From IMG/VR virus record IMGVR_UViG_3300027782_000027, positions 62,001 to 126,000 of that record: a stretch of DNA of 64,000 nucleotides; one strand, 5' to 3'. The translations under genes and the position numbers were made by a program. Under the pieces are notes generated by a model. It was given only the letters and a program-made list of their open reading frames with translations, was not told where the DNA came from and did not search any database. This document shows positions 1 to 28,870 of this stretch, piece after piece (the stretch's first letter is position 1; every line of letters begins with the position of its first letter).

Positions 1-480
1 TCGTCAACATCTATACCAACATCTACACCAACTCCAACACCTTCTATAACTCCAACACCTTCTATAACCCCTACTAATACTGTTACGCCAACAAATACAA
101 TTACTCCTACTAACACTCAAACACCAACTAATACTGTTACACCAACAAATACTCAAACACCAACTAATACTGTTACACCAACAAATACAATTACACCAAC
201 AAATACAATTACTCCAACTCAAACACCGACTAATACTGTTACACCAACAAATACTCAAACACCAACACCTACTCAAACTCCTACTAATACACCGACACCT
301 TCAATTACCCCAACTAAAACTGTAACTCCAACGGTAACTCAAACACCTACTAATACTATAACTCCAACACCTTCAATTACTCCAACTAAAACTGTAACTC
401 CAACGGTTACTCAAACACCAACTAATACCACAACTAAAACACCTACACCAACTACTACACCTACACCAACAAGATTACCA
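1..480 (+). repeat. Coding Thr-Pro (TPTxT) low-complexity repeat, including a ~72-nt duplication (about 289-357 and 361-429)
   Basis: Recurrent acaccaac/actccaac units; [20 protein letters not shown] occurs twice. Confidence 0.9.
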
Positions 481-1122
481 GCATTAGTTTATGATTTAGA
501 CGCCGCTTATTATTCCGCAATGCCAACTAATGGTTCTGTAGTTTCTGGAACAGGAGCCTATAGTGTTACAGTAACTAATGCAGGAAGTAGTATATCTTGG
601 AACAGTGCAAATGGTGGGGTATTTATTAAATCAAATAATGTTGGTACAGATGCGATATATGGTGGTCCAAACTATGTAACCAGTCAAAGTTACACAGTAT
701 TTATGGCCTATAAACTATCAGCAACATCTCTTGGAAGATTGTTAAACACTCAAAATGAAAGTATTAAGGATTGGTTGATGGGGGCATACAATGGTAATCC
801 AAATACTTTTTATCCAAACTTTAGTGTAAACTTACCATCATCAGGAGCTGATACAGTTTGGCATTTAGATTGGGCAACTTGGGATACGGGGACTAATACA
901 GGTACACTGTATACCTCAACAAATACCGCCCCAACTAATTTCTCATATTCTGCAACTAATGGTGGTGGAGGTGGATTTAACCAAATAAGATTGTTTAGTC
1001 GTTCATCAGGTAGTGAAGTACAAACAGCAAACATAGGATTTGTTAAAGTTTGGGATGGGGTATTATCATTATCCCAAATACAGGCTCAACACGCTTTATA
1101 CAAAACTAGATTTGGATATTAA
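1..1122 (+). CDS. 5'-truncated virion protein: long Thr/Pro repeat stalk plus C-terminal LamG/ConA-like domain
   Basis: Frame 1 is open from base 1 ([18 protein letters not shown]...) into the tracked 520..1122 ORF. The C-terminus has LamG-like features (YDLDAAYY, IGFVKVWDGVLSLSQI). Confidence 0.8.
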   Translation, partial: SSTSIPTSTPTPTPSITPTPSITPTNTVTPTNTITPTNTQTPTNTVTPTNTQTPTNTVTPTNTITPTNTITPTQTPTNTVTPTNTQTPTPTQTPTNTPTPSITPTKTVTPTVTQTPTNTITPTPSITPTKTVTPTVTQTPTNTTTKTPTPTTTPTPTRLPALVYDLDAAYYSAMPTNGSVVSGTGAYSVTVTNAGSSISWNSANGGVFIKSNNVGTDAIYGGPNYVTSQSYTVFMAYKLSATSLGRLLNTQNESIKDWLMGAYNGNPNTFYPNFSVNLPSSGADTVWHLDWATWDTGTNTGTLYTSTNTAPTNFSYSATNGGGGGFNQIRLFSRSSGSEVQTANIGFVKVWDGVLSLSQIQAQHALYKTRFGY

Positions 1123-1176
1123 AAACCATTCTATGTGTCCATCATGTTTTGATTAAACTTTAATTTAATTTAAAAG

Positions 1177-1183
1177 TATTTAT
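1177..1183 (+). promoter_or_regulatory. TATTTAT putative late promoter (portal)
   Basis: Motif ends 8 nt before ATG 1192. Confidence 0.65.
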
Positions 1184-1191
1184 ATTTTAGT

Positions 1192-3027
1192 ATGAGTGAA
1201 AATAAACTAACGGTATGGCAACGGTTATCCCAAACATTTGGACCCAATTCTCTTTTGGGGCAGGATTATCCTACGTACAAATATGATAAAAGTGAATTAT
1301 TAAAAACAACCTCTAAGTCTGAATATGATAGAGAAAAACTTCAGGCACAACAAACATATTATTTAGCTAACCAATGGGGTAGAATTGAAAATAATCTATA
1401 TACACAGGCGGTTTATTATGAACCAACTCGTTTATCATCTTTCTACGACTATGAGTCAATGGAATTTACCCCTGAAATTGGTGCCGCTCTTGACATATAC
1501 GCTGAAGAATCTACAACCATTGACCAAAATGGTTTTATGTTACAAATTTATTCTGAATCATCGAGAATTAAATCAATTCTTGGAGATTTGTTTAATAATG
1601 CTTTAGATATTAACACTAACTTACCTATGTGGATAAGAAACACATGTAAGTATGGTGATAATTTTGTATATCTTAAATTAGACCCTGAAAAAGGTATTAT
1701 AGGATGTATGCAATTACCAATCATTGAGATTGAACGATTGGAAGCGGGTATGGGAGCACACTCAACAGACTCAACAACTAATCCTGAAAAGAAACATTTG
1801 AAGTTCAAATGGAAACAAAAGGATTTAGAGTTTAATACTTGGGAAATTGCTCACTTTAGATTACTTGGTGATGATAGAAGACTTCCTTATGGAACTTCTA
1901 TGTTAGAAAAGGCTCGTCGTATTTGGAAACAATTATTGTTATCTGAAGATGCTATGTTAATCTACAGAACATCAAGAGCACCTGAAAGACGTGTATTTAA
2001 AGTATTTGTTGGAAACATGGATGATGCGGATGTTGAACCATATATCCAAAGATTTGCTAATAAGTTTAAGAGAAGTCAAACGGTAGACCATAAGACAGGT
2101 AATGTGGATATGAGATTTAATCAGATGGCTGTTGACCAAGATTATTTCGTTCCAGTTAGAGATACCGCACAAGCAAGTCCTATTGAGACATTGGCGGGAG
2201 CTCAAAACTTATCTGAAATTGCCGACATCGAGTATATCCAAAAGAAATTGTTAACGGCTCTTCGTGTTCCTAAAGCGTTTTTAGGATTTGAAGAAACTGT
2301 TGGTGATGGTAAGAACTTATCATTACAAGATATTCGTTTTGCAAGAACTATTAATAGAATTCAGAAAAATATGATTTCTGAATTAAATAAAATTGCAATC
2401 ATACACCTATTCATTTTAGGTTTTGAAGATGAGATATCAAACTTTAATTTAAGTTTAACAAATCCATCAACTCAAGCTGATTTGATGAAGATTGATGTAT
2501 GGAAAGAAAAAATTCTTCTATATAAAGATATGGTTGCTGACCCTGGTAGTGGTATTGCCGCAGTATCTATGTCATGGGCTAAGAAACATATTCTTGGATT
2601 TTCTGATGAAGAAATTAAACTTGATTTACAACAACAACGTATTGAAAGAGCTGTTGGTGAAGAACTTAAGAAAACTGCTGAGGTAATTACTCATACAGGA
2701 TTATTCGATAATCTTGATAAGTTGTATGGTAAAAAGGAAGGTGAACCTGCTGCTGCACCATCAGAAGGAGGGGCACCACCAGATGGTGGAATGAGTGATT
2801 TTGGAGGTGGTGAAAGTGCTCCACCTGAAGCTCCGGCCTCACCAGCTCCAGCACCACCTGAAGCCGCTCCAACAGTACCTGAAGGGTCGTATACCCGTAA
2901 TTCTGAACTTAATATAATATTAGAAAATACAGGAATGTTAAATGAAGATGAATTAATTGATTTAAATCGTGTTCAAGAATCTTTAGGGGAAATGGGTAAT
3001 CAATTAGATAAACTACTTAAAGGTTGA
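1192..3027 (+). CDS. Portal protein (T4 gp20-like)
   Basis: YESMEFTPEIGAALDIYAEES, EDAMLIYRTSRAPERRVFK and DIEYIQKKLLTALRVPK motifs; sits at the start of the head module. Confidence 0.93.
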   Translation: MSENKLTVWQRLSQTFGPNSLLGQDYPTYKYDKSELLKTTSKSEYDREKLQAQQTYYLANQWGRIENNLYTQAVYYEPTRLSSFYDYESMEFTPEIGAALDIYAEESTTIDQNGFMLQIYSESSRIKSILGDLFNNALDINTNLPMWIRNTCKYGDNFVYLKLDPEKGIIGCMQLPIIEIERLEAGMGAHSTDSTTNPEKKHLKFKWKQKDLEFNTWEIAHFRLLGDDRRLPYGTSMLEKARRIWKQLLLSEDAMLIYRTSRAPERRVFKVFVGNMDDADVEPYIQRFANKFKRSQTVDHKTGNVDMRFNQMAVDQDYFVPVRDTAQASPIETLAGAQNLSEIADIEYIQKKLLTALRVPKAFLGFEETVGDGKNLSLQDIRFARTINRIQKNMISELNKIAIIHLFILGFEDEISNFNLSLTNPSTQADLMKIDVWKEKILLYKDMVADPGSGIAAVSMSWAKKHILGFSDEEIKLDLQQQRIERAVGEELKKTAEVITHTGLFDNLDKLYGKKEGEPAAAPSEGGAPPDGGMSDFGGGESAPPEAPASPAPAPPEAAPTVPEGSYTRNSELNIILENTGMLNEDELIDLNRVQESLGEMGNQLDKLLKG

Positions 3028-3034
3028 TATTTAT
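3028..3034 (+). promoter_or_regulatory. TATTTAT putative late promoter
   Basis: In the intergenic gap before ATG 3051. Confidence 0.65.
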
Positions 3035-3050
3035 ATAAAAAAATATAAAC

Positions 3051-3761
3051 ATGAGATTCGGATTAATAAAAACATTAGTAGAAAATAAATTAATTGATTC
3101 CTTTGTTAAAGGAACTCTTAAAACTGATATGAGACTTTTTGAAAGAAAATTACTTAAAAATAGTGATTTTTGTAAATTAATGTCGATATATGATAATTTA
3201 AAAGAAAATAAAGAATTAGATAAAGAAACCGCAACTTATTTGGTTGATGATTTATCTAGTGAATTTAGACAAATTAAATTATCTGAGAATACAGTAAGTT
3301 TTATTAAAAGTTGGACTAAAGATATTGTTCTTGAAAACAAATACAAAACAATTGATGAGTTATTTTATGGTGACTTATTAAAACCTGAAAAGAAATCAAT
3401 TGCTAAAAAATCAATTGTTGAGTCTTTAGGTAAAAAACCAATAATTAAAGAAAGTAAAACTCAAAACGTCCCAATTAGTTCAATGTTAAAAGTTGCTAAT
3501 AAGACTGCTGAAAAATATTTAGAAAATTTAACTGAATCTGAAAGAAATTCTGTTAAAGAAATTTTAACTGCTGGTGATGAAAATTTAAAGACAAAATTTA
3601 CTGAATTAAAAGAAACAGCAATTAAAAAAATTGATACTCTTATTTCAGAATCAGATGAAGAATTAACTAAAGTTTTACTAGAAACAAAAGAAAGACTTAC
3701 AAATACAAAACATTCTAAAAAAGAATATATTAAATTAATGAATTTAACTCAAAATTTATAA
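3051..3761 (+). CDS. Hypothetical head-module protein (K/E-rich, helical)
   Basis: 236-aa ORF between portal and protease, with a late motif upstream. Confidence 0.75.
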   Translation: MRFGLIKTLVENKLIDSFVKGTLKTDMRLFERKLLKNSDFCKLMSIYDNLKENKELDKETATYLVDDLSSEFRQIKLSENTVSFIKSWTKDIVLENKYKTIDELFYGDLLKPEKKSIAKKSIVESLGKKPIIKESKTQNVPISSMLKVANKTAEKYLENLTESERNSVKEILTAGDENLKTKFTELKETAIKKIDTLISESDEELTKVLLETKERLTNTKHSKKEYIKLMNLTQNL

Positions 3762-3941
3762 TTCAGTATTTTTTGAATTTTTATAAATAGCATTATTTAA
3801 AATCTGACGTTTCATGTCAGATTTTTTTTTATACTCTTTCCTGTCTTGTAATTCTTTTATCATTTTAGTTTTTAAAACTTTTGATTTGAATTTTTTAAGG
3901 GATTTTTCTATATCCCCTTTATCAACTGTGATAATTAACAT
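3756..3941 (-). CDS. rpsU: Phage-encoded ribosomal protein bS21 (61 aa)
   Basis: MLIITVDKGDIEKSLKKFKSKVLKTKMIKELQDRKEYKKKSDMKRQILNNAIY matches the Bacteroidota bS21 pattern (MLII.V..G..I..ALK.FK.K...R..F.KPS..R...KA.Y). True start is ATG 3941, not 4040. Confidence 0.9.
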   Translation of the reverse strand: MLIITVDKGDIEKSLKKFKSKVLKTKMIKELQDRKEYKKKSDMKRQILNNAIYKNSKNTEL

Positions 3942-3945
3942 TTTT

Positions 3946-3974
3946 TTGACAACTATGCTTTTGTGTGTTATTAT
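3946..3974 (+). promoter_or_regulatory. Sigma70-type promoter TTGACA-N17-TATTAT
   Basis: -35 at 3946-3951 and -10 at 3969-3974, upstream of ATG 4012. Confidence 0.7.
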
Positions 3975-3980
3975 TAATGT

Positions 3981-3987
3981 ATAAATA
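3981..3987 (-). promoter_or_regulatory. TATTTAT putative late promoter for bS21
   Basis: ATAAATA on the plus strand, ~40 nt upstream of the rpsU start. Confidence 0.6.
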
Positions 3988-4011
3988 AACGAAGATATGA
4001 AAAGGTTGTAA

Positions 4012-4476
4012 ATGAAAAAAGGAAAAAGTTGCTCTATCAAAGGGTATAAAAAAATAAAATGTTCTTATGGGACTGTGGATTCTAAAAATTTTAAATCAAT
4101 ATACTTAAACATTCAATCTTGGGTTGAACCCAAATCTATTGAGGACTCTTGGATAAGACTTGTGTCTTACTTTAATAAACAAATAAAAAATACTATTGGG
4201 GATTATATTGATGTGGAATTTTTTTATGACAATTTTATAGTTGATTTAGACTTACGAACTTCAGGAATTGCATTAAAGAAAAGGTCTTTTATGAATCTTG
4301 AAATTACTTTTTTTATTAAAAAACCTATGGATTTTAAATCTCTTGAAATAAAAAATTCACTTAAAAAAATTGTTAGTTGTTTAGAATCTGATATTTTTAA
4401 CAAATCTAATCATTTTAGTTTTCATTTAAGTAAAAACGATAAAATCAAAAAAGAAAGTAAAATAGAATTTGTATAG
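4012..4476 (+). CDS. Hypothetical protein
   Basis: 154-aa ORF with its own sigma70-type promoter. Confidence 0.7.
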   Translation: MKKGKSCSIKGYKKIKCSYGTVDSKNFKSIYLNIQSWVEPKSIEDSWIRLVSYFNKQIKNTIGDYIDVEFFYDNFIVDLDLRTSGIALKKRSFMNLEITFFIKKPMDFKSLEIKNSLKKIVSCLESDIFNKSNHFSFHLSKNDKIKKESKIEFV

Positions 4477-4483
4477 TATTTAT
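4477..4483 (+). promoter_or_regulatory. TATTTAT putative late promoter (protease)
   Basis: In the gap before ATG 4499. Confidence 0.65.
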
Positions 4484-4498
4484 CTATAAAAAGGTAAA

Positions 4499-5218
4499 AT
4501 GCAAAATTACAAAATATTAGGTCCAAAAGAGACAGGAAAAGGTATTTTAATTGAGATGGACGCAGGTTATGTTTCTCCAACAGAAAAACATAATCAAACA
4601 TTCTTACAAGAAAGTAAGGATTTTAAAGATTATTCTAAACCATTTGAATTTTATGCCGTTCTACAAAAATATAATACACCGAATAGAAACGGTAGAATAT
4701 ATCCTGAAAGAATTTTAAAAAGAGAGTCCGAAAATTATATAAAGAATTATATCGGTAAAAAAACCTCTTTATCTGAACTTAACCACCCTGAATCTTCATT
4801 AATAGATTTAGATAGAGTATCACATATGATTACAGAGATGTGGTGGGATGGTAATGTTCTATTAGGTAAATTGTTACTTCTAACTTCACCAGGGTTCCAT
4901 GAAAGAGGTATCGTATCAACAAAGGGTGACCAAGCGGCAAACCTATTAAGACTAGGTGTGACGTTAGGTATATCATCAAGAGGGGTAGGTTCCTTAAAAA
5001 AAGTAGGTGAACAAAATGAAGTTCAGGATGATTTTGAATTAATTTGTTTTGACTTGGTGTCATCACCATCAACACCAGGAGCTTATTTATTTACTGAACC
5101 TGATGGAAGATTTGCGTTTGAGGAAAACCTAAAAGAAGAAAATGATATGAAAGCTGCAAGAACAGTTAACAAATCGCTTGATTTAATGGGAAGACTTACC
5201 GATTATTTAGGAAAATAA
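4499..5218 (+). CDS. Prohead maturation protease (T4 gp21-like)
   Basis: NRNGRIYP, ELNHPES, LGISSRGVGS and FDLVSSPSTPGA motifs. Confidence 0.93.
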   Translation: MQNYKILGPKETGKGILIEMDAGYVSPTEKHNQTFLQESKDFKDYSKPFEFYAVLQKYNTPNRNGRIYPERILKRESENYIKNYIGKKTSLSELNHPESSLIDLDRVSHMITEMWWDGNVLLGKLLLLTSPGFHERGIVSTKGDQAANLLRLGVTLGISSRGVGSLKKVGEQNEVQDDFELICFDLVSSPSTPGAYLFTEPDGRFAFEENLKEENDMKAARTVNKSLDLMGRLTDYLGK

Positions 5219-5224
5219 ATAATT

Positions 5225-5440
5225 ATGGAAATGGACGAAAAATACTTTGTGGCTAAAATACAATACGATTTGCCAGATGAGAACACAGGAAAAATTAAAA
5301 AAGTAAGAGAAGAAAAACTTGTAAGAGGTTATTCTGTTACCGATGTTGAAGCTAAAGTTACTGAAGCTTACAAATCATTTAGTTATGATTGGAGAATCAC
5401 TTCAGTAAGTGAAAGTAAAATTGACGAAGTGTTTGAATAA
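5225..5440 (+). CDS. Small conserved protein, DUF4494-like
   Basis: YFVAKIQY...GKIKKVREEKLVRGYSVTDVEAKVTE resembles the recalled Bacteroidota DUF4494 pattern. Confidence 0.5.
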   Translation: MEMDEKYFVAKIQYDLPDENTGKIKKVREEKLVRGYSVTDVEAKVTEAYKSFSYDWRITSVSESKIDEVFE

Positions 5441-5462
5441 TCACAAAGTTTAAAAAAAATTT

Positions 5463-5489
5463 AAAAGGGGACATTTTGTCCCTTTTTTT
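5463..5489 (+). terminator. Rho-independent terminator
   Basis: Stem GGGACA/TGTCCC followed by a T-tract. Confidence 0.8.
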
Positions 5490-5531
5490 ATGCCAATTAT
5501 ATTAAAAAACTATTTTTTTAGAATATCGATA

Positions 5532-5538
5532 TATTTAT
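5532..5538 (+). promoter_or_regulatory. TATTTAT putative late promoter (scaffold and capsid)
   Basis: Lies after the terminator and before ATG 5557. Confidence 0.7.
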
Positions 5539-5556
5539 CAATAAAATAACGCACAA

Positions 5557-6951
5557 ATGGCAGAAAAAAACTTAGTTGAAGAGGCATTAATCCAAATACA
5601 AAATTTGGAAGAAGCTATCAATGAAAACGCAAAAGAAATACTTCATTCTACAATGAAAGAAGAAATTAGCGAATTAGTAAAAGAGTCTATGAAAAATGAG
5701 GCTGAAGAAGAAGATGAATTTGAAATCGAAGACGAGATTGAATCAGATGATGAATCAGAAGAAGAAGATGAGTCTGAAGAAGACGAATCGGAAGAAGAAG
5801 ACGAAGATTCTGAGGAAGGATTCGATATGATGGATTTATCTGACGAAGGTGACGAAGATGAAAATGAATTTGATGTTCAAGATTTATCTGACGAACCGAT
5901 GTCGACAGTTCTTAAAGCATTCAAACAAATGAAACCAACTGATTCTTTTGAAATCAAGAAAGAAGGTGATTTTATTCATTTAAAAGATGAAGAAGATGAA
6001 TACCTTATTCAAAACGGTTCAGAAGACGATGAGTTTGGTGAATTTGGTGAATCTCAAGAAGAAGAAACTGAAGAAATGGTTTATGAAATCGAAATGGATT
6101 CACTTGAAGAAGAAGAAACTGAAGAAATGGTTTACGAAATCGAAATGGATTCTAACGACTTTTCATTTGATGATGATGAAGAAGAAGAAGAATCTAAAGA
6201 AGAAGATTTCTATATGGAAGAAGAAATGAATCCTGTTATGGAAACATTTAAAGCAAAATTAGGTAACGGAGCCGCTAAAGTAGGTAATGCTAAAACAGCA
6301 TCTACTTTTAAGAAAACAAAAGGTGGTTTTAACGAAAAGAAAAAAGCCGTTAATCCAACTGCTCACACAGGAAAACCTAAATTTGAATTTAAAGAAGGTG
6401 ATGTGTTTGAAATGCCAAGTCAACGTGCTGAGAAATTCACTAAGGAAGAAGCTAAAGAAGCTGCACGTACTTATGGATTCGGTTCTAAAAAAGGACGTGG
6501 TTTGAGAAAAGCAATTACACCTAACAGAAATCTTACTTTTGAAAACCATGAAATCATGGAAGAAGTTGAAATGTTGAGAGCTAAAAATGAAGAGTATAGA
6601 AAAGCTTTAAATATGTTTAGAGATAAACTTAATGAAGTTGCGATATTCAATTCTAATCTTGCTTACGCTACAAGATTGTTCACAGAACATTCTACATCAA
6701 AACAAGAAAAAATTAACATTTTAAGAAGATTTGATTCAGCGGAATCCCTTAAAGAGTCTAAAGCCCTTTATAAAAATATCAAAGACGAATTATATATTGA
6801 CAACAATAAGAAATTCGTTAATGAGTCAATCGAAAGAGTTATTGAAAAAACTCCACAGTCAGGTTCAGCAGTTAATCTGATTGAATCTAAGACTTACGAG
6901 AATCCACAATTCTTGAGAATGAAAGACATTATGTCAAAAATAATAAAATAA
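5557..6951 (+). CDS. Prohead scaffold/core protein (gp22-like)
   Basis: Very acidic centre and coiled-coil C-terminus (LNEVAIFNSNLAYATRLF), directly before the capsid gene. Confidence 0.8.
   Translation: MAEKNLVEEALIQIQNLEEAINENAKEILHSTMKEEISELVKESMKNEAEEEDEFEIEDEIESDDESEEEDESEEDESEEEDEDSEEGFDMMDLSDEGDEDENEFDVQDLSDEPMSTVLKAFKQMKPTDSFEIKKEGDFIHLKDEEDEYLIQNGSEDDEFGEFGESQEEETEEMVYEIEMDSLEEEETEEMVYEIEMDSNDFSFDDDEEEEESKEEDFYMEEEMNPVMETFKAKLGNGAAKVGNAKTASTFKKTKGGFNEKKKAVNPTAHTGKPKFEFKEGDVFEMPSQRAEKFTKEEAKEAARTYGFGSKKGRGLRKAITPNRNLTFENHEIMEEVEMLRAKNEEYRKALNMFRDKLNEVAIFNSNLAYATRLFTEHSTSKQEKINILRRFDSAESLKESKALYKNIKDELYIDNNKKFVNESIERVIEKTPQSGSAVNLIESKTYENPQFLRMKDIMSKIIK
6058..6152 (+). repeat. 44-bp direct repeat with 51-bp period (EEETEEMVYEIEMDS x2)
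   Basis: Copies at 6058-6101 and 6109-6152 differ by one synonymous base. Confidence 0.9.
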
Positions 6952-6977
6952 ACTTAAAAATAAAAAACCTATAAAAA

Positions 6978-8867
6978 ATGGGAGCATTATTAGAAAGTGG
7001 ATTAGTTGGTAACATTGGTCTTAAGCACTTGAAAGTTATCAAAGAAGACACAGTAAACAAATGGGACAAATTAGGGTTCCTTGAAGGTCTTAAAGGCCAC
7101 CTAAAAGAAAATGTAGCACAATTGTATGAAAACCAAGCGTCACATTTGATTAACGAAGCATCTTCTACGGCAGATTCAGGTTCATTCGAGACTGTGGTAT
7201 TCCCTATCATCAGACGTGTGTTCTCTAAATTATTGTCTAACGAAATCGTTTCTGTACAAGCTATGAACTTACCAATCGGTAAATTGTTCTACTTCGTACC
7301 ACAAATCCAAGGTTATTCTGGTGGTTCAGCTATTAACGGATTAAACGTTACTTCTGGTGACCACTACCCGCCTGTAGGTTCTCCTGGAAACTATCCTGGA
7401 AGTCCTGACGCAGGTTATGGTTCAGGAACAGGAAGTGCTAACAACCCAACTTACGCGAAAAACCTTTATGATTTATTCTACGAAGGAACTGAGCCAGGTC
7501 TTAACCCAGCAGGTTTATTTGATTATTCTAAAGGACGTTTTGTAACACTAACAGGTTCATGTCCAACAGTTGCTTGGTCTGACGGAGCGTTAATTCCTTC
7601 AGGTTATACTGTACAAGGTGGTTCTAACACTGAATTTAGAAAAATTATTGTAGCACTTTCAGGTTTAACTTCTGCAGGTAATGGTAAGTTAATTGGACCT
7701 GACGGACAAGAGCAGGATACTGAATCTTTCTTATCTGGATTGGTTCTTTATACTAATAACGCAACTGTTGCGTCTAACTTAGGTACTAATACATATACAC
7801 CACTTTTATACCGTGTTGTAACTCAAAAGTATGGTCAATCAATATACGGTCCGAACTATACTAGTACTCAGGCAACTTTTGGTAGTACTTTCGCAAGTAC
7901 AACTCAAGGTAACGGTGGTTACTATGATAACGTATGTAATACACAAGGTTATATCTATTTAGAGATTGACACTCAAGTTCCGGCATGTATTGCTTGTGGA
8001 CAGTCAACTCCTGATGGATATTCTGGAGCAACATTAACTGCTACACAATGGAGTGGTTCTTCTGCTAATACTAACATCCAAGCAGCTTGGAGACGTTACG
8101 AAGAGTTAGAATTTGAAGATAAAATTGGTGAAGTTTCTTTTGACCTTGAGTCAGTAACTGTATCTGTTACAGAAAGAAAATTAAGAGCACAATGGTCTCC
8201 AGAAATGGCACAAGACGTTGCAGCGTTCCACAACATCGATGCTGAAGCTGAATTAACAGCTTTATTATCTGAACAAGTGGCGGCTGAAATTGACCGTGAA
8301 ATCTTACGTGACTTACGTAAAGGTGCAGCGTGGACATTACGTTGGGATTACAACGGATGGAAGCGTCTGAACAACCAATCAACTCCTTACACTCAAAAGG
8401 ACTGGAACCAAACGTTGATTACTGCAATCAACCAAATTTCAGCTCAAATCCACAAGTCTACTTTAAGAGGTGGAGCTAACTGGATTGTTGTATCTTCTGA
8501 AATCAGTGCAATCTTTGATGACTTGGAATACTTCCACGTATCAAATGCGGCCCCTGAGCAGGACCAATTCAACATGGGTATCGAGAGAGTTGGTACATTA
8601 AGTGGTCGTTACCAAGTATACCGTGACCCATACTTCCCAGCTAACACTGTGTTGATTGGTCATAAAGGTACTTCTTTATTGGATACTGGTTACATCTACG
8701 CTCCATACGTACCGTTACAATTAACTCCAACAATGTATAACCCATTCAACTTTACTCCTATCAAGGGTATCATGACAAGATACGCGAAGAAGATGGTGAA
8801 CAATCGCTTCTATGGTCGTATCATCGTTGATGGTGTTCGTACATTCGATTTGAATGAATTAAGATAA
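6978..8867 (+). CDS. Major capsid protein (T4 gp23-like) with enlarged insertion domain
   Basis: VSVQAMNLPIGKLFY, TERKLRAQWSPEMAQD, IDAEAELTALLSEQVAAEIDREIL and GYIYAPYVPL motifs. Confidence 0.95.
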   Translation: MGALLESGLVGNIGLKHLKVIKEDTVNKWDKLGFLEGLKGHLKENVAQLYENQASHLINEASSTADSGSFETVVFPIIRRVFSKLLSNEIVSVQAMNLPIGKLFYFVPQIQGYSGGSAINGLNVTSGDHYPPVGSPGNYPGSPDAGYGSGTGSANNPTYAKNLYDLFYEGTEPGLNPAGLFDYSKGRFVTLTGSCPTVAWSDGALIPSGYTVQGGSNTEFRKIIVALSGLTSAGNGKLIGPDGQEQDTESFLSGLVLYTNNATVASNLGTNTYTPLLYRVVTQKYGQSIYGPNYTSTQATFGSTFASTTQGNGGYYDNVCNTQGYIYLEIDTQVPACIACGQSTPDGYSGATLTATQWSGSSANTNIQAAWRRYEELEFEDKIGEVSFDLESVTVSVTERKLRAQWSPEMAQDVAAFHNIDAEAELTALLSEQVAAEIDREILRDLRKGAAWTLRWDYNGWKRLNNQSTPYTQKDWNQTLITAINQISAQIHKSTLRGGANWIVVSSEISAIFDDLEYFHVSNAAPEQDQFNMGIERVGTLSGRYQVYRDPYFPANTVLIGHKGTSLLDTGYIYAPYVPLQLTPTMYNPFNFTPIKGIMTRYAKKMVNNRFYGRIIVDGVRTFDLNELR

Positions 8868-8886
8868 TCTTATCTTAATAGATAAT

Positions 8887-8917
8887 AAAAAAGGGACAAG
8901 AAATTGTCCCTTTTTTT
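8887..8917. terminator. Bidirectional Rho-independent terminator
   Basis: A-tract, GGGACAA-GAAA-TTGTCCC, T7, between convergent genes. Confidence 0.85.
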
Positions 8918-9170
8918 ATTTAGATAAAAGTCTAAGTGATTTAGATAATACTTCAGATTCTTCTAATGAATATACTCCCTTTAAGAATGAGTATTTAACG
9001 GATTCAATTAAACATAATTTTGCCTGTTCGTCAGTTAGATTAGAGATAAAATCATTTAAACCATCTGATGATTTATATTCAATAGAATTAAATAAGATAC
9101 CACCATCATTTAAATTGTTTAATTCATTTAAAATTTCTGATTTTAATTTGTCTTCTTCTGAATGTTCCAT
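8916..9170 (-). CDS. Hypothetical protein
   Basis: 84-aa ORF filling the gap; no recognisable motif. Confidence 0.6.
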   Translation of the reverse strand: MEHSEEDKLKSEILNELNNLNDGGILFNSIEYKSSDGLNDFISNLTDEQAKLCLIESVKYSFLKGVYSLEESEVLSKSLRLLSK

Positions 9171-9179
9171 AGTATTAGA

Positions 9180-9186
9180 TATTTAT
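9180..9186 (+). promoter_or_regulatory. TATTTAT putative late promoter
   Basis: Upstream of ATG 9212. Confidence 0.6.
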
Positions 9187-9211
9187 GTAAATATAAACAA
9201 TTTTTTTGGTT

Positions 9212-9949
9212 ATGAAAAGTAATATGATTTTAGAAATTCTTAAAAAACTAACTGAATATGAGAAATATTTAAATGAAGCATCAACTACATCTACTGTTGG
9301 TGGTACATATAAGCCTCCGATTAGACCAGGAATTAGAAAATGGTTTGATGAAAATTTAAAGCCATTTATTGAACCTGTATCTGACTATGTTGATGCTGAA
9401 ATAAATTACGATTCTTTAGATGGTCATGTTAAAAAATCTAAAAAAGAAATTTCTAAAAAAGAAAAAAATGCTAAACATATTAGAGATAAGGATTATAGAC
9501 AAGATGCTCCTGATGAAGGTGATGATGAATATGCTTACGCACCATTTAAAATGTATAAACCAGATTATCAAGTGGATAGTGTAAATGAATCAAAAAAAGA
9601 TACTAATGAAGATTTAGGTGTTTGGTTTGGTACAAAGAAAAAACCAAAGGGTAGTAAACAACCTAAAGGTCCATGGGTAAATATTTGTAGTAAAAAAGAT
9701 GGTAAACATCCACCATGTGGAAGACCTGAGGGTGATACAAAGGGTTATCCTAAATGTAGAGCGGTAGGGGTCGCAGCTAAAATGACCGATTCTCAAAAAC
9801 AATCTGCTTGTCAACAAAAAAGAAAGGCCGAAAAAAAAGATACTCAAACAGGTAAAGGTCAAAAACCTGTTATGACATCATACAAACCTAAAAAGAAAAA
9901 GACCAACGAATCGGTCTTAATATCTTTAATTAGAAAATCTTTAGGTTAA
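9212..9949 (+). CDS. Basic late protein with Cys-rich C-terminal domain (W-V-x-I-C...PCGR...YPKC)
   Basis: ORF track; ATG 9212 preferred over TTG 9206. The motif is recalled from uncharacterised phage and large-virus proteins. Confidence 0.7.
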   Translation: MKSNMILEILKKLTEYEKYLNEASTTSTVGGTYKPPIRPGIRKWFDENLKPFIEPVSDYVDAEINYDSLDGHVKKSKKEISKKEKNAKHIRDKDYRQDAPDEGDDEYAYAPFKMYKPDYQVDSVNESKKDTNEDLGVWFGTKKKPKGSKQPKGPWVNICSKKDGKHPPCGRPEGDTKGYPKCRAVGVAAKMTDSQKQSACQQKRKAEKKDTQTGKGQKPVMTSYKPKKKKTNESVLISLIRKSLG

Positions 9950-10191
9950 TAAATACTTTTACTAACTCTAATACCTGGTCTAAGAGGTTCGTAAGCTCTT
10001 TCAGGTCTTGAGTATTGTCCTGTATTATATTCAGAATTTAATTCTCTCAATGCGTTTTTATATTCACCTGTTTCATCAGATAATATTCTATCAATAACAT
10101 CTTGAACTAAGCCTCTATCAAGTCTTCCGTATTCTGGTTCTTCTGACATTTCTTTTAATACTTTTTTAATTTGCGTATCTAATTTTGACAT
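9946..10191 (-). CDS. Hypothetical late protein (N-terminal IKKVLKE)
   Basis: 81-aa ORF with a late motif upstream at 10220-10226. Confidence 0.7.
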   Translation of the reverse strand: MSKLDTQIKKVLKEMSEEPEYGRLDRGLVQDVIDRILSDETGEYKNALRELNSEYNTGQYSRPERAYEPLRPGIRVSKSIY

Positions 10192-10201
10192 GATTCTAAT
10201 A

Positions 10202-10606
10202 TTAACAATTTATTTTATTATAAATATTGTCAAGAGAATGATTAATTTGACTTTCTAATTCTTTTTCAATTTCCATTGCTCTATATTCCATTTCTCTACG
10301 GAACGCACTAACCAATTTATCCCATTGAGTTTTATTTAATTTAATAAAATAACTGTATGTATGATTAGTTACAGTAACTTGTCCACCATCCATTGTAACA
10401 AAAATACCTAATTTATCATTACGGATATATTTCTTATCTGATATGGGTGCGATTATGAGTTCAGAATCTTCCGAATGAATGAGTTTACGACATATGGTGG
10501 AACATTTCCTCACGTTAGACATATAGATGTCAAATTCGGTATCCTTTCGGTCTAATCTACGTAAGTATAGACGATATTTAATCCACAGTTTTTTTATTAT
10601 AGTCAT
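10202..10606 (-). CDS. Hypothetical early protein
   Basis: 134-aa ORF preceded by a Bacteroidota-type promoter. Confidence 0.7.
   Translation of the reverse strand: MTIIKKLWIKYRLYLRRLDRKDTEFDIYMSNVRKCSTICRKLIHSEDSELIIAPISDKKYIRNDKLGIFVTMDGGQVTVTNHTYSYFIKLNKTQWDKLVSAFRREMEYRAMEIEKELESQINHSLDNIYNKINC
10220..10226 (-). promoter_or_regulatory. TATTTAT putative late promoter
   Basis: Lies in the 3' end of the 10202 ORF, upstream of the 10191 start. Confidence 0.5.
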
Positions 10607-10625
10607 GTCATTTATGATTTGACTA

Positions 10626-10656
10626 CAAATATACTACGATTTTTTAATAATCCAAA
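10626..10656 (-). promoter_or_regulatory. Bacteroidota housekeeping-type promoter TTTG-N19-TATATTTG
   Basis: -33 TTTG at 10656-10653, 19-nt spacer, -7 TAnnTTTG at 10633-10626, upstream of ATG 10606. Confidence 0.7.
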
Positions 10657-10664
10657 ATAATTGA

Positions 10665-11192
10665 TTAACAATATGCTCCTGAACAATGTTTTTTTCCATC
10701 AAGACCTTTGATTTTACCTTTACATACTTGAACAGCGTGACCATTTGAATAAGCGGAAGGGTAAACGTCATATTTTGATTTTGCAGATGCGACACCACGA
10801 GCACATAATTTAGTACCAGCCTTTTTACGACCTTCAGTCATTTGATATAATGCCAATGCTGTGCCAGGGTCTCCATTTACATCATCTACCATAGCTAAAT
10901 CGTCGATAATATTGTCATCTTCCATTACCTCTTCAGAACTAAAATCATCACCTTCAATTTCGTTCATTATAAAATCAAAAACTTGGTCCATATTATTTTT
11001 AGATTCTGCAATGTGGTCTTGAGCCCAATCATGACCATTGTCTAAAATAGATTCTATCATTTTTTTATCCTTACCAAGGAGTATTTCACATTGGCGTTTC
11101 ATTTGTTCTAAATTACTGAAGAACATATATCTTTGAGTTTCCTCTTTAAGTACTTTTTTAATTATGTTATTTAAATTTTTCATATTACGCAA
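10665..11192 (-). CDS. Late protein with C-terminal LCARG...YPSAY..G..VQVCKG domain (DUF5872-like)
   Basis: YDVYPSAYSNGHAVQVCKG motif; N-terminal IIKKVLKEE. Confidence 0.6.
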   Translation of the reverse strand: MRNMKNLNNIIKKVLKEETQRYMFFSNLEQMKRQCEILLGKDKKMIESILDNGHDWAQDHIAESKNNMDQVFDFIMNEIEGDDFSSEEVMEDDNIIDDLAMVDDVNGDPGTALALYQMTEGRKKAGTKLCARGVASAKSKYDVYPSAYSNGHAVQVCKGKIKGLDGKKHCSGAYC

Positions 11193-11703
11193 TCATATCA
11201 TCTTCTTTTAGGTCATTACAGACTACATCTAAAAACACTTCAATATCGTGTTCAATACCTTCATAATCCTCAAATACATTATTTCCTTCAGTTGTATTTT
11301 CAAACATACAAGTTTGAAAATTACCTTCAGTATCACAGTAAATTTCACCATAGTAATCACTATCATCAACTGTTAGATATCCTGTATGTATTTTTTCATC
11401 TTCAGTATCTTCAGTTGACTCGTATCTAAATTTAAATGACGGCATACCTGGAAATTCAAAAGACCAAAAACCACCAGCTTTAGTCATAAAATCATCTTTA
11501 GATGATGGTTCATCTTCTATTGAAATACCTTTAGTGAATTTCCCAAGAATTTCTCTTTCTTTAGGAGTAATTGATTCCATACCTGACTGACTAATCTTAT
11601 CTAAGATTGCGTCAATTTTATCTTCACCTGGTGTTAACGCTTCAGATAATACAAATTTTAATAACTTAATATATTCGTTTTCTTTTAATACTACTTTTTT
11701 CAT
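11185..11703 (-). CDS. Hypothetical acidic late protein
   Basis: 172-aa ORF overlapping its neighbours. Contains IDAILDKISQSGMESIT (DUF6576-like helix pair, tentative). Confidence 0.7.
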   Translation of the reverse strand: MKKVVLKENEYIKLLKFVLSEALTPGEDKIDAILDKISQSGMESITPKEREILGKFTKGISIEDEPSSKDDFMTKAGGFWSFEFPGMPSFKFRYESTEDTEDEKIHTGYLTVDDSDYYGEIYCDTEGNFQTCMFENTTEGNNVFEDYEGIEHDIEVFLDVVCNDLKEDDMIA

Positions 11704-13196
11704 TTCTTATTAACTATTTGGAATGTTAGTGTTTTTTTATAAGTATCTACTTCTCCTGATGTTAGTACTTTAATATCAACATTATATTCATTTGGTATTT
11801 TATCTTTTGTATCAAATATAAAATAGTATTCATTAGACGCTCTATTAATTTGAGTCCAGTCTTGAACTTGTACTTCAGTCGTTCCCTCGTTAACATATAT
11901 TCTATAATATGCGGTAACAGGTGTTAGTACTTCATTTGAAGTGTATGCTTTTTTAATAACCACACCAACTTTTCTAACATCAGTATTGAGTATTTTTTCA
12001 TCTTGTTTGATACCGTAAAAATCAAATCCAAATAACTCAGGGTCCCTACTTTGAATACCTAATGTAAAATAACCTTGATAAGGTAATACAGTTAAATCAT
12101 TAACTACATCAGGTAATGAAATGCCGTTATAAACTAAATTAGACCAAGTATCCGTAAACATACATGGGGTTGTTACAGTTATCCCACTTGTTGTTATTTG
12201 ATAAACACCTTGTGTTATTTGACAACCTGTGTATGTTCCAACAACATTACCCTGATTATTCTCAAGAGTAACAACAGGTAGATTATCTAAACTTGTTGGG
12301 ACCCCTCCGATATAAGAATATAAATAAAGACGATTATTGTTATGAGAATAAAATGAATTTCTATTATCTAATATTAAATCATTATATGAAGTTTCTAAAA
12401 AAGGTTCGTAAAATGTTTGAGTGTGTCTTGTAAAGAATCCAACTGAATAATTTTCAGTTAACCCTGTTAAATTTTCTAACTGAGGTAAATAAGCAATTCC
12501 CCATCCTGTAAATCCTGATGTCGAACCTGTAAGATACTGATTAATTTCATTTGTCATGTCAAATTCAATATCCTCATTACCAAATTCAAAGTGTTGTGTA
12601 TCAACGATGATTAAATCAGAATAATCAACATTACCTCCTGTTGTGTTATTGTATATTCCATTAGTACTCCAACCACTTAATGTTGTTCTTTGATACCAAT
12701 TTGAAGGTCTTTGTGAATATGATTTATCTTGGGGTAATGTAATTGGTGTTAATAATCCATTAGATGTATTAAGTGTATTTTGAACATCGTAATAGTCGTA
12801 TCCAACTCCCTCATCCCAACTTTGAGCCACCCCTGTACTACCTGAAGTTAATGGTATTCTAAATAAAATTAAATCAAATGAAGTGGCTCTTAATCTACCC
12901 TGAGATGTATATTCATTTGATAAACCTTCTTTATCAAATGAAGATGTATTTGTCATTCTCAAGGTATGTGTTATTCCTGAAAATCCAGTACATCCTGTAG
13001 ATATTGTTTTGGTTTGAATTTTCCCTACAAGTTGTGAAAGGTCTAAATCAAATATGAATCTGCTAAATCCTGGTGAAGCAATTACATCTGATGATGAACC
13101 AAAATAAAGTTGTGTCCACGGAGACTTACCAGTGTTAGTAAAACTGTTGGATAATAACGTATTATTACGACTAAAATATGAACGATGAATTGACAT
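11700..13196 (-). CDS. Putative virion structural protein (beta-rich)
   Basis: 498-aa T/S/G/N/Y-rich ORF with a late motif upstream. Confidence 0.7.
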   Translation of the reverse strand: MSIHRSYFSRNNTLLSNSFTNTGKSPWTQLYFGSSSDVIASPGFSRFIFDLDLSQLVGKIQTKTISTGCTGFSGITHTLRMTNTSSFDKEGLSNEYTSQGRLRATSFDLILFRIPLTSGSTGVAQSWDEGVGYDYYDVQNTLNTSNGLLTPITLPQDKSYSQRPSNWYQRTTLSGWSTNGIYNNTTGGNVDYSDLIIVDTQHFEFGNEDIEFDMTNEINQYLTGSTSGFTGWGIAYLPQLENLTGLTENYSVGFFTRHTQTFYEPFLETSYNDLILDNRNSFYSHNNNRLYLYSYIGGVPTSLDNLPVVTLENNQGNVVGTYTGCQITQGVYQITTSGITVTTPCMFTDTWSNLVYNGISLPDVVNDLTVLPYQGYFTLGIQSRDPELFGFDFYGIKQDEKILNTDVRKVGVVIKKAYTSNEVLTPVTAYYRIYVNEGTTEVQVQDWTQINRASNEYYFIFDTKDKIPNEYNVDIKVLTSGEVDTYKKTLTFQIVNKK

Positions 13197-16970: not shown

Positions 16971-17333
16971 TTATATTGAGAAATTCTCGTTACTTGAATT
17001 TATATCTTTATCTAAAAGACCTTGTAAAATATCGTCATCCATAGATGAAATATCAAAACTTGATTCGTGACTTTGTTGTTTTTCCCATATACCTGACTGT
17101 AACTTTGAAAGAGTTAATTTCTTTTCAACACAGTCGTTTACAATTTTTTGTTGTTTTTCGATTACAGGGCCTATTAAAGTCATATCTTCAGGTTCTTTCA
17201 TCATTCCAATCATTTTATTTTGAATTCTGATGGCGGTAGTCCTTTGCTCCACTAATTCATTATATATTTCTTGCATCAAAGCAAGAATAGAATCTTTAGT
17301 AAAATTAATTTGTTTCTTTTTAGGTTTTGTCAT
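16971..17333 (-). CDS. Hypothetical late protein
   Basis: 120-aa coiled-coil ORF with a late motif 4 nt upstream. Confidence 0.75.
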   Translation of the reverse strand: MTKPKKKQINFTKDSILALMQEIYNELVEQRTTAIRIQNKMIGMMKEPEDMTLIGPVIEKQQKIVNDCVEKKLTLSKLQSGIWEKQQSHESSFDISSMDDDILQGLLDKDINSSNENFSI

Positions 17334-17337
17334 ACTA

Positions 17338-17344
17338 ATAAATA
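17338..17344 (-). promoter_or_regulatory. TATTTAT putative late promoter
   Basis: 4 nt upstream of the 17333 start. Confidence 0.6.
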
Positions 17345-17360
17345 GATATTTAGTGGAAAT

Positions 17361-19964: not shown

Positions 19965-19967
19965 ATT

Positions 19968-20228
19968 TTAATATTTGTTTATTATTTTATTATTTAATAA
20001 AGTGTTGAATGCCAATTTAAATGGTATTGATAAATTTGATTTATGACCAAGTTTTTCATCAGTTTCTTCACTTTCTGATAGAACAACATCTACCATAATT
20101 TTTATTAGTTCATATTTTACAACACTAATATGTTGTTCACTATCTCCGCTAATACTCGCGTCATATGTAACACTGTCACTAATTAAATCTAAATCAATGT
20201 AATAGTGTTCATTAAGAATTGTCAGCAT
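19968..20228 (-). CDS. Hypothetical protein
   Basis: 86-aa ORF in the operon. Confidence 0.65.
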   Translation of the reverse strand: MLTILNEHYYIDLDLISDSVTYDASISGDSEQHISVVKYELIKIMVDVVLSESEETDEKLGHKSNLSIPFKLAFNTLLNNKIINKY

Positions 20229-21541: not shown

Positions 21542-21544
21542 TAT

Positions 21545-22369: not shown

Positions 22370-22371
22370 AA

Positions 22372-22406
22372 TTTTTTTTATTTTTTTTATTTTTTTTATT
22401 TTTTTA
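22372..22406. repeat. (T8A)3-T7A microsatellite (A-rich leader on the minus strand)
   Basis: Read directly between the rmlC and rmlD genes. Confidence 0.8.
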
Positions 22407-23779: not shown

Positions 23780-23807
23780 TATTTTATAAATTTATATTTT
23801 TTTACTT

Positions 23808-24632: not shown

Positions 24633-24639
24633 ATATATT

Positions 24640-25563: not shown

Positions 25564-25585
25564 AATATATTTTATTTTTTATTTT

Positions 25586-26557: not shown

Positions 26558-26566
26558 ATTTTATTT

Positions 26567-28114: not shown

Positions 28115-28137
28115 ATTATTTTTTTAATTTTAACATT

Positions 28138-28866: not shown

Positions 28867-28870
28867 GTAT

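What the first reader, a model, noticed from the sequence alone, without database searches (positions are those of the whole stretch)
3756..3987. Antisense ribosomal protein bS21 inside the head module, under a late motif and without an SD
Seen: a 61-aa bS21 between the portal and protease genes, with TATTTAT ~40 nt upstream, no SD, and Tyr53 retained. Established: bS21 occurs in large freshwater phages near structural genes. In Bacteroidota, bS21 (Tyr54 in Flavobacterium) helps sequester the anti-SD, and flavobacterial rpsU is autoregulated through its own SD. Inference: the SD-less phage copy escapes that feedback and tunes initiation toward SD-less late mRNAs.
Basis: partly seen in the sequence, partly recalled or inferred. 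Interest (0 to 1): 0.65.

Follow-up and report, generated by a model that had tools for sequence, protein, structure and literature searches.

The report
Phage ribosomal protein bS21, already published
A large freshwater phage of Bacteroidota carries its own copy of the small ribosomal protein bS21, on the opposite strand inside its head-gene block. This exact gene in this exact contig was described in 2022, so only some regulatory details are new.

Summary
Window 3756-3941 (-) encodes a 61-aa bS21 that passes the curated cut-offs of Pfam PF01165 and NCBIfam TIGR00030. It lies between a T4-type portal and prohead protease. TATTTAT sits 39 nt upstream, there is no Shine-Dalgarno (SD) sequence, and Tyr53 aligns with F. 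johnsoniae Tyr54.

It is not new. The window matches, with 0 mismatches over 11,941 nt, the 240,759-bp contig Ga0209500_10000006 (Lake Simoncouche, clade b) of Chen et al. 2022 (PMC9723584). That paper already reports the reverse-strand bS21 in the head module, Bacteroidetes hosts, the conserved Tyr54 and late expression.

Added here:
- TATTTAT is a real sense-strand motif before 18 of 64 genes, mainly structural ones. It also precedes TerL and portal in the cultured Flavobacterium phage immuto.
- SD sequences are missing genome-wide (2 of 64 genes), so "no SD" is not special to bS21.
- A + strand terminator-like hairpin lies inside the gene's 3' third, where synonymous change is suppressed.
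- Six relatives lack the gene, and one carries a 150-nt deletion.

The "escapes rpsU feedback" idea is plausible only for hosts with an SD-bearing rpsU. "Tuning toward SD-less mRNAs" cannot separate phage from host messages.

The parts
3756..3941 (-). bS21 (rpsU-like) coding sequence, 61 aa, ATG start at 3941, TAA stop at 3758-3756
   Evidence: PF01165 40.7 bits; TIGR00030 37.8 bits; PHROG 21469; dN/dS 0.04-0.49 among relatives
3783..3785 (-). Codon of Tyr53, the counterpart of F. johnsoniae bS21 Tyr54 that stacks on 16S A1534
   Evidence: phmmer alignment to 7jil_z; role of Tyr54 from PMC7797042; Tyr invariant in the 10 clade-b-like variants; Tyr, His or Phe in 50 wider variants
3981..3987 (-). 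TATTTAT promoter-like motif in sense orientation, 39 nt before the bS21 ATG
   Evidence: Same 7-mer in sense orientation within 60 nt upstream of 18 of 64 genes (shuffles: mean 2.9, max 10 of 2000); conserved in all 10 variant sequences; present upstream of 30 of 50 distinct bS21 genes in wider relatives
3942..3980 (-). A-rich leader of bS21 without an SD sequence
   Evidence: No SD core; duplex energy with the anti-SD is -0.1 kcal/mol; energies of +1.5 to -6.8 kcal/mol in 50 variants, none at -8 or below
3799..3834 (+). Terminator-like hairpin (12-bp stem, 3799-3825) plus T9 run. It lies 38 nt after the stop of orf236 and inside bS21 codons 36-48
   Evidence: Terminator scan; RNA fold -11.9 kcal/mol, z -5.5; stem invariant while the loop varies; synonymous divergence 0.04-0.19 in codons 38-61 against 0.44-0.66 in codons 1-37; bS21-less relatives have an ordinary terminator at the same place
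3946..3974 (+). TTGACA-17-TATTAT promoter-like site facing orf154. Its TTGACA is the conserved 'GTTGTC' just upstream of the bS21 ATG on the other strand
   Evidence: 11 of 12 match with TG; TTGACA conserved in all variants and also in three of the four bS21-less intergenic regions inspected
3051..3761 (+). orf236, convergent neighbour whose last 6 nt overlap bS21. It equals 'bS21_CN' (fam498, gene _102) of Chen et al.
   Evidence: Gene order in supplement TS2/TS6; no Pfam, PHROG or NCBIfam family; kept at 31-63% identity in bS21-less relatives
4012..4476 (+). orf154, divergent neighbour sharing the 70-nt intergenic region with bS21
   Evidence: no family match
1192..3027 (+). T4 gp20-type portal protein (context)
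   Evidence: PF07230, E 1.6e-75
4499..5218 (+). T4 gp21-type prohead protease (context)
   Evidence: PF03420, E 1.9e-26

Best explanation
This is a functional, phage-borne copy of ribosomal protein bS21 of the Bacteroidota type. It sits on the opposite strand between two small head-module genes of a T4-like, roughly 240-kb or larger freshwater myophage, whose host is most likely a member of the Flavobacteriales. Shown: the homology, the position, the purifying selection, the retained signature tyrosine and the weakly basic C-terminus. Inferred: the gene is transcribed from its own TATTTAT element, the same motif that precedes the portal, protease, scaffold, sheath and tube genes, so it comes on with the structural genes. 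It is translated without an SD, like almost every gene of this phage. The protein takes the exchangeable bS21 site on host 30S subunits. There Tyr53 keeps the 16S 3' tail (anti-SD) tucked away and sustains SD-independent initiation when capsid proteins must be made in bulk. Its mRNA has no SD, so its synthesis does not depend on the bS21-free ribosomes that drive host rpsU translation in many Flavobacteriales. The phage therefore sets the bS21 supply outside the host's homeostatic loop and would, as a side effect, damp host rpsU translation. In this clade the gene's 3' third also carries the probable terminator of the converging orf236 transcript.
For: Family assignment. Bacteroidota type: the two best PDB matches are the two solved Bacteroidota ribosomes, P. 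gingivalis 9i5v and F. johnsoniae 7jil, ahead of the spirochaete, plastid and Firmicutes proteins that follow; the tables give no organism names, those beyond 9i5v and 7jil being recalled from the PDB codes. Tyr53 aligns with Tyr54. The C-terminal segment 46-61 has net charge +1, which fits 'less basic' in PMC7797042. Selection and conservation. Motif; the motif-bearing genes include portal, protease, sheath (PF04984) and tube (PF06841), while DNA polymerase B, the SNF2 helicase and the sugar-synthesis genes checked lack it. The same motif stands before TerL and portal of Flavobacterium phage immuto. SD-less genome. Host: the closest cultured phages by MCP and portal include Flavobacterium phage immuto, and the best RefSeq bS21 hit is Empedobacter (PMC9723584 TS5). 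Metatranscriptomes show bS21 among the highly transcribed genes together with MCP (PMC9723584). bS21 is needed for initiation on SD-less mRNAs and rpsU is autoregulated through its SD (PMC9976891). Terminator.
Against: Nothing here tests ribosome incorporation. Six relatives with full coverage lack bS21 and one has a 150-nt deletion of the promoter and N-terminus, so the gene is dispensable in some settings. bS21-less relatives carry a one-mismatch version of the motif (TATTTTT or TATTTGT) at the same spot, so this sequence block may partly serve orf154. The published RNA mapping is not described as strand-specific, so 'late expression' of bS21 could include read-through from the converging gene, at least in clades without the terminator. 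Only 3 of 80 sampled Bacteroidota rpsU genes have a very strong SD, so the feedback argument depends on the host. The N-terminal helix evolves fast (pN 0.15-0.29), which fits adaptation or relaxed constraint as well as simple supply.
Confidence: 0.55

Rival explanations
1. Specialised-ribosome model (Chen et al. 2022). The phage bS21 replaces host bS21, and its diverged N-terminal helix, which lies where mRNA binds, makes ribosomes prefer phage transcripts over host ones.
For: The N-terminal helix differs from bacterial bS21 at the positions Chen et al. flag: bacterial KRKFEKTG against phage KSKVLKTK (PMC9723584). Codons 1-37 evolve fast (pN 0.15-0.29).
Against: No sequence feature that could be recognised separates phage from host leaders; both are SD-less and A-rich. 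Fast N-terminal evolution also fits relaxed constraint. The gene has been lost in several relatives.
Confidence: 0.22
2. Non-ribosomal or virion role. A small, very basic protein (pI 10) encoded among prohead-core genes acts as an internal head or DNA-binding protein. Alternatively it is packaged and injected to act at the start of the next infection.
For: It sits between portal and protease, where T4 keeps its small prohead-core genes (established T4 gene order, from my own knowledge). pI is 10.0, with 16 Lys in 61 aa. Chen et al. raise encapsidation as a possibility.
Against: The opposite-strand orientation sets it apart from the head operon. The full-length bS21 profile match and the retained Tyr53 argue for the ribosomal site. 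bS21-less relatives build the same head module.
Confidence: 0.08
3. A weakly useful passenger gene. It was captured from a Bacteroidota host, is kept in many lineages by modest benefit or by linkage to the embedded terminator, and is on its way to loss in others.
For: Six bS21-less relatives. A 150-nt deletion in L025 spares the hairpin. bS21 diverges faster (69% identity) than portal and protease (92-96%).
Against: dN/dS is well below 1. The reading frame and Tyr are intact in 50 distinct variants. Position and strand are invariant across clades. High transcript levels are reported.
Confidence: 0.12
4. Sub-claim rival: the TATTTAT at 3981-3987 is not the bS21 promoter. It is the reverse complement of an element serving orf154 (+ strand TATAAATA, the T4 late-promoter consensus, 24 nt before the orf154 ATG), and bS21 is driven from elsewhere.
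For: An exact TATAAATA lies on the + strand at 3980-3987. The core AAATAAAC is conserved before orf154 even in bS21-less relatives.
Against: Across the window the sense-strand motif is TATTTAT (18 genes). Sense TATAAATA occurs before only 4 genes, and one of these is the mirror of a divergent TATTTAT. The exact 7-mer is present in the bS21-bearing genomes and one base off in the bS21-less genomes.
Confidence: 0.3

Closest known systems
bS21 of the freshwater Bacteroidetes myophages, clades a-e, of Chen et al. 2022 (ISME Commun 2:31, PMC9723584)
   Same: It is the same object. Window 1-11941 matches the 240,759-bp contig with 0 mismatches, and that contig is Ga0209500_10000006, clade b, with this bS21 as gene _103. 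The reverse strand, the TerL-portal-protease-MCP context, the Tyr54 equivalent and the predicted Bacteroidetes host are all as published.
   Different: The paper gives no promoter, terminator or SD analysis. Added here are the TATTTAT motif, the embedded hairpin with suppressed synonymous change, the genome-wide lack of SD and the bS21-less relatives that still carry the 'bS21_CN' homologue.
Flavobacterium johnsoniae bS21 / rpsU (PDB 7JIL; Jha 2021, McNutt 2023)
   Same: Same family and length class (61 against 64 aa). The proteins align end to end, with Tyr53 opposite Tyr54 and a weakly basic C-terminus.
   Different: Identity is only about 36%. The N-terminal helix is diverged. There is no SD, whereas flavobacterial rpsU has an extended SD below -13 kcal/mol used for autoregulation.
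Pelagibacter phage HTVC008M bS21 (Mizuno et al. 2019)
   Same: A T4-like aquatic myophage carrying bS21. Its incorporation into E. coli ribosomes was shown experimentally for that protein (as cited in PMC9976891).
   Different: The host phylum is different and uses SD. tblastn of this protein against 50,697 GenBank phage records gave no match at E 1e-3, so the two are not close relatives.
T4 late promoter TATAAATA (gp55-dependent)
   Same: A short AT-rich element with no -35 partner, placed directly before structural genes of a T4-like phage.
   Different: The sense-strand sequence here is TATTTAT, not TATAAATA. No TSS data exist, and no gp55 homologue was looked for.

Membership tests
Ribosomal protein bS21 (Pfam PF01165 / NCBIfam TIGR00030) | Profile match above the curated cut-off over the whole domain | tested here: met
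   PF01165 40.7 bits against 27, profile positions 2-54 of 55; TIGR00030 37.8 bits against 28.95
Ribosomal protein bS21 (Pfam PF01165 / NCBIfam TIGR00030) | Physical component of the 30S subunit | not testable with these tools
   Needs ribosome purification and mass spectrometry from infected cells
Bacteroidota-type bS21 (Jha et al. 2021) | Signature aromatic residue at F. johnsoniae position 54 | tested here: met
   Tyr53 aligns with Tyr54; invariant in clade-b variants
Bacteroidota-type bS21 (Jha et al. 2021) | C-terminal part much less basic than in other phyla | tested here: met
   Residues 46-61 have net charge +1; criterion from PMC7797042. No side-by-side comparison with other phyla was run.
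Bacteroidota-type bS21 (Jha et al. 2021) | Closer to Bacteroidota bS21 than to that of other phyla | tested here: met
   The top PDB hits are P. gingivalis and F. johnsoniae. The best RefSeq hit is Empedobacter at 49% (PMC9723584 TS5). No phylogeny of my own was built, because the genome scan returned only Bacteroidota.
bS21-encoding Bacteroidetes myophages (Chen et al. 2022) | bS21 on the reverse strand inside the TerL / portal / prohead protease / MCP block | tested here: met
   the gene order equals supplement TS2 for Ga0209500_10000006
bS21-encoding Bacteroidetes myophages (Chen et al. 2022) | Sequence identity with a listed genome | tested here: met
   0 mismatches over 11,941 nt to the 240,759-bp IMG/VR contig; the same length is listed for Ga0209500_10000006, clade b
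SD-autoregulated rpsU of Flavobacteriales (McNutt et al. 2023) | Exceptionally strong SD (pairing below -13 kcal/mol) upstream of the start codon | tested here: not met
   -0.1 kcal/mol for the window gene; none of 50 phage variants at -8 or below
T4-type late promoter | TATAAATA on the sense strand upstream of late genes | tested here: not met
   Sense TATAAATA precedes 4 genes only; the sense motif is TATTTAT, before 18 genes
Intrinsic (Rho-independent) terminator | G+C-containing stem-loop directly followed by a T run, placed downstream of a stop codon | tested here: met
   3799-3825 plus T9, 38 nt after the orf236 stop. Actual termination was not tested.

The most novel reading that the evidence does not exclude
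Two linked ideas are not in the literature I could search. (1) In clade b and its nearest neighbours, the last third of the bS21 gene doubles as the intrinsic terminator of the converging head gene orf236 ('bS21_CN'). The two genes are therefore physically coupled at their 3' ends. That would explain the published co-variation of their transcript levels and phylogenies, and the strong suppression of synonymous change in bS21 codons 38-61. (2) Because the phage copy lacks the SD that makes host rpsU translation depend on bS21-free ribosomes, its product fills those ribosomes and switches off host bS21 synthesis through the host's own feedback loop.
Probability: 0.3. Interest if true: 0.45.

Novelty: already known. 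Interest (0 to 1): 0.3.

Why it matters
Phage-encoded bS21 is the commonest ribosomal protein in viruses. In Bacteroidota, bS21 decides whether the anti-SD is hidden, so these phages are a natural experiment in ribosome take-over. This window adds nothing to the central discovery, which was published from this very contig. It does supply testable regulatory anatomy: a candidate late promoter shared with a cultured Flavobacterium phage (immuto), which offers a laboratory system for the motif; a gene-embedded terminator; and natural bS21-minus relatives for comparison.

Tried and rejected
- GenBank phages: megablast of window 1-12000 and tblastn of the 61-aa protein found nothing. No close cultured relative carries this gene.
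- Phage immuto: its head module has no bS21.
The third query used Bacteroidota-type patterns and returned only Bacteroidota, mostly Bacteroidales. It therefore cannot serve as an unbiased phylogeny and contains almost no Flavobacteriales. I used it only for SD statistics.
- Other phage clades: searches of viral contigs with two 55-67%-identical representatives found nothing.
- Distant representatives: for P0025 the contig was too short and no DNA was held. P0030 sits in a different phage-like context, co-directional with glycosyltransferase and thymidylate-synthase genes, so the head-module placement is not universal.
The window-wide orientation count reversed that view, though it remains a minority rival.
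- Host-type promoter: a Bacteroidetes-type -33 TTG / -7 TAnnTTTG promoter upstream of bS21 was looked for by eye and not found.
- Minus-strand terminator: none was found downstream of bS21.
- Embedded hairpin: it is absent from more distant bS21 clades, so it is not a general feature.
- Structure and complex prediction: not run. The partner is rRNA, and the sequence homology is unambiguous.

Full report
**1. What is there**

The ORF listing and the sequence show a minus-strand ORF at 3756-3941. It has an ATG start and encodes 61 aa. The longer TTG-initiated version (to 4040) adds 33 residues that match nothing.
- The 61-aa protein matches Pfam Ribosomal_S21 over essentially the whole profile (40.7 bits, cut-off 27).
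- It also matches NCBIfam TIGR00030 (37.8 bits, cut-off 28.95) and the PHROG annotated as ribosomal protein S21.
- Its neighbours on the + strand are a T4 gp20-type portal (1192-3027), orf236 (3051-3761), orf154 (4012-4476) and a gp21-type prohead protease (4499-5218). A DUF4494 protein, an acidic scaffold-like protein and a gp23-type major capsid protein follow.
- bS21 converges on orf236, and their stop codons abut so that 6 nt overlap. It diverges from orf154 across a 70-nt spacer.

**2.

- TATTTAT lies at 3987-3981 on the minus strand, 39 nt before the ATG.
- There is no SD core. Predicted pairing with the anti-SD is -0.1 kcal/mol.
- Against all PDB chains, the two best matches are the bS21 proteins of the two solved Bacteroidota ribosomes: P. 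gingivalis 9i5v (identified through PMC12123416) and F. johnsoniae 7jil. Spirochaete, plastid and Firmicutes proteins rank below them. The search tables give no organism names, so those below the top two are assigned from my recall of the PDB codes.
- In the alignment, Tyr53 sits opposite F. johnsoniae Tyr54. That residue stacks on A1534 where the 16S 3' tail turns away from the mRNA channel (PMC7797042).
- The C-terminal 16 residues carry a net charge of only +1, as described for Bacteroidetes bS21.

**3. It is a real, selected gene**

- Twenty-four IMG/VR contigs found with the protein all show the same order and the same opposite orientation.
- bS21 identity falls to 69% while portal and protease stay at 92-96%. 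Even so, pairwise dN/dS is 0.04-0.49.
- A second set of 80 loci, fetched through the protease (74-100% identity), contains 66 with a bS21 ORF (50 distinct proteins). All 66 lie on the strand opposite the protease, 506-599 nt upstream of it.

**4. It is already published**

- Window 1-11941 is identical, with 0 mismatches, to IMGVR_UViG_3300027782_000027, a contig of 240,759 bp.
- Supplementary Table 1 of Chen et al. 2022 (PMC9723584) lists Ga0209500_10000006 from Lake Simoncouche, Canada: clade b, 240,759 bp.
- Its Table 2 gives the gene order TerL(_99), _100, portal(_101), fam498(_102), bS21(_103, strand -1), _104, prohead protease(_105), DUF4494(_106), _107, MCP(_108). This is exactly the order in the window.
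- Its Table 5 gives the best RefSeq match of gene _103 as an Empedobacter (Flavobacteriales) bS21 at 49%.
- The paper already states four things: the gene is consistently on the reverse strand in this conserved block; the hosts are predicted to be Bacteroidetes; an aromatic residue at position 54 is conserved; and bS21 is highly transcribed along with structural genes.
- McNutt et al. 2023 discuss these phages in connection with rpsU autoregulation.
- The central finding is therefore known.

**5. The motif**

The window-wide count says otherwise.
- With a crude set of 64 genes, TATTTAT occurs in sense orientation within 60 nt upstream of 18 genes. It is the most frequent upstream 7-mer. Shuffled upstream regions give a mean of 2.9 and never more than 10 in 2000 trials.
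- Sense TATAAATA precedes only four genes.
- Motif-bearing genes include portal, orf236, bS21, protease, scaffold, tail sheath and a gp19-like tail tube.
- DNA polymerase B, an SNF2 helicase and the sugar-synthesis genes checked lack it.
- The same 7-mer stands 12-21 nt before the start codons of TerL, portal and other genes of the cultured Flavobacterium phage vB_FspM_immuto. This phage is among the closest cultured relatives by MCP (41.6%) and portal (37%).
- 'Late motif' is thus a fair label by association. No transcription start has been mapped, and I found no paper that names the motif.

Two cautions apply.
- bS21-less relatives carry a one-mismatch version at the same position, so part of this block may serve orf154.
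- The conserved GTTGTC directly before the bS21 ATG is the TTGACA of a + strand promoter-like site (TTGACA-17-TATTAT, 11 of 12 matches). TTGACA is kept in three of the four bS21-less intergenic regions inspected.

**6. No SD is the rule here**

- Only 2 of 64 genes have GGAG, GAGG or AGGA at -20 to -5.
- Upstream regions pair with the anti-SD less well than random positions do (mean -0.24 against -1.32 kcal/mol).
- None of the 50 bS21 variants reaches -8 kcal/mol.
- It also undercuts 'tuning toward SD-less late mRNAs', because host and phage messages are alike in this respect.
- What the literature does support is that F. johnsoniae ribosomes lacking bS21 initiate poorly on SD-less mRNAs and well on rpsU mRNA (PMC9976891).
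- The straightforward reading is therefore supply. The phage keeps 30S subunits saturated with a bS21 that hides the anti-SD, from a message whose translation does not depend on bS21-free ribosomes.
Strong rpsU SDs are reported for about 80% of Flavobacteriales. Only 3 of the 80 mainly Bacteroidales rpsU loci I fetched reach -13 kcal/mol.

**7. A terminator inside the gene**

- On the + strand, 38 nt after the orf236 stop, a 12-bp hairpin (3799-3825) is followed by nine T. Its folding energy is -11.9 kcal/mol, with z = -5.5 against shuffles.
- It lies within bS21 codons 36-48.
- In ten distinct relatives the stem never varies while the loop does.
- Synonymous divergence is 0.44-0.66 in codons 1-37 but only 0.04-0.19 in codons 38-61. 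This points to a nucleotide-level constraint on top of the protein.
- bS21-less relatives have an ordinary terminator at the corresponding place, directly followed by TTGACA. Termination after orf236 therefore looks like an old feature of the module. In this clade it has come to reside inside bS21.
- More distant bS21 clades lack it.

This bears on the published expression evidence.
- The RNA mapping is not described as strand-specific.
- bS21 and its converging neighbour fam498 (= orf236) were reported to have similar transcript levels.
- Where no terminator intervenes, read-through on the other strand cannot be excluded.

**8. Dispensability**

- L025 is identical to L019 except for a clean 150-nt deletion. 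The deletion removes the motif, the leader and the first 36 or so codons, and it spares the hairpin.
- Six protease-defined relatives with more than 4 kb of upstream sequence have no trace of bS21. They keep orf236 and orf154 only 75-145 nt apart.
- One of them (L119; protease 91% and portal 85% identical to the window) is closer to the window than some bS21-bearing relatives (about 80%). This suggests loss rather than primary absence.
- Chen et al. did not detect fam498 in their two bS21-less outgroups. Here homologues at 31-63% identity are present.

**9. Verdict**

- The finding is already known from this same contig.
- The modest new points are the promoter-like motif shared with a cultured phage, the embedded terminator and the natural loss variants.

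Noticed in passing
L025 3040-3060 compared with L019 7954-8103: A natural 150-nt deletion removes the TATTTAT motif, the leader and about 36 codons of bS21, while the flanks are identical. The embedded hairpin is retained.
   Followed up: yes
L119, L121, L122, L153, L154, L185 (between the orf236 and orf154 homologues): These relatives have no bS21 at all but do have orf236 ('bS21_CN') homologues, which Chen et al. did not detect in their bS21-less outgroups. In L119 and L121 the intergenic region holds a canonical terminator followed directly by TTGACA.
   Followed up: partly
window 1-1122 (+): The ORF between TerL and portal runs off the left edge. It starts with about 450 nt of Thr/Pro-rich repeats (TPTNT-like units). 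The odd Cys/Trp-rich minus-strand ORF at 4-276 is just its antisense frame.
   Followed up: no
window 45623-47128 (-): A 501-aa protein has a complete Fe/Mn superoxide dismutase (residues 36-226) plus about 270 unmatched C-terminal residues. It is preceded by TATTTAT 5 nt before the ATG, like the structural genes.
   Followed up: no
window about 17000-35600 (-): A long co-directional block has very short gaps between genes and no TATTTAT between 17361 and 36961. The five members with Pfam matches encode sugar-nucleotide and polysaccharide enzymes: GDP-mannose 4,6-dehydratase, an NAD-dependent epimerase, UDP-GlcNAc 2-epimerase and a double glycosyltransferase. This matches the lipopolysaccharide-like genes noted by Chen et al.
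   Followed up: partly
window 5557-6951 (+): The scaffold-position protein is extremely acidic in its first half and contains an exact internal duplication (EEETEEMVYEIEMDS, twice). It matches no Pfam or PHROG family.
   Followed up: no
window 6978-8867 (+): The gp23-type major capsid protein is 629 aa. The Pfam Gp23 profile matches in two stretches, the best at residues 344-616, and the phage tblastn hits cover only 38-58% of the query in one or two pieces. This suggests a large insertion in the N-terminal half.
   Followed up: no
window 1184-1192, 16971-side, 45623-side and 54237-side start regions: Several TATTTAT motifs end only 4-8 nt before the ATG. If the motif is a -10-like element, these mRNAs would be leaderless or nearly so.
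   Followed up: no
L106 5001-5195: A 45%-identical bS21 (P0030) sits in a different phage-like context. It is co-directional with glycosyltransferase, methylase-like and thymidylate-synthase genes, not in a head module.
   Followed up: no
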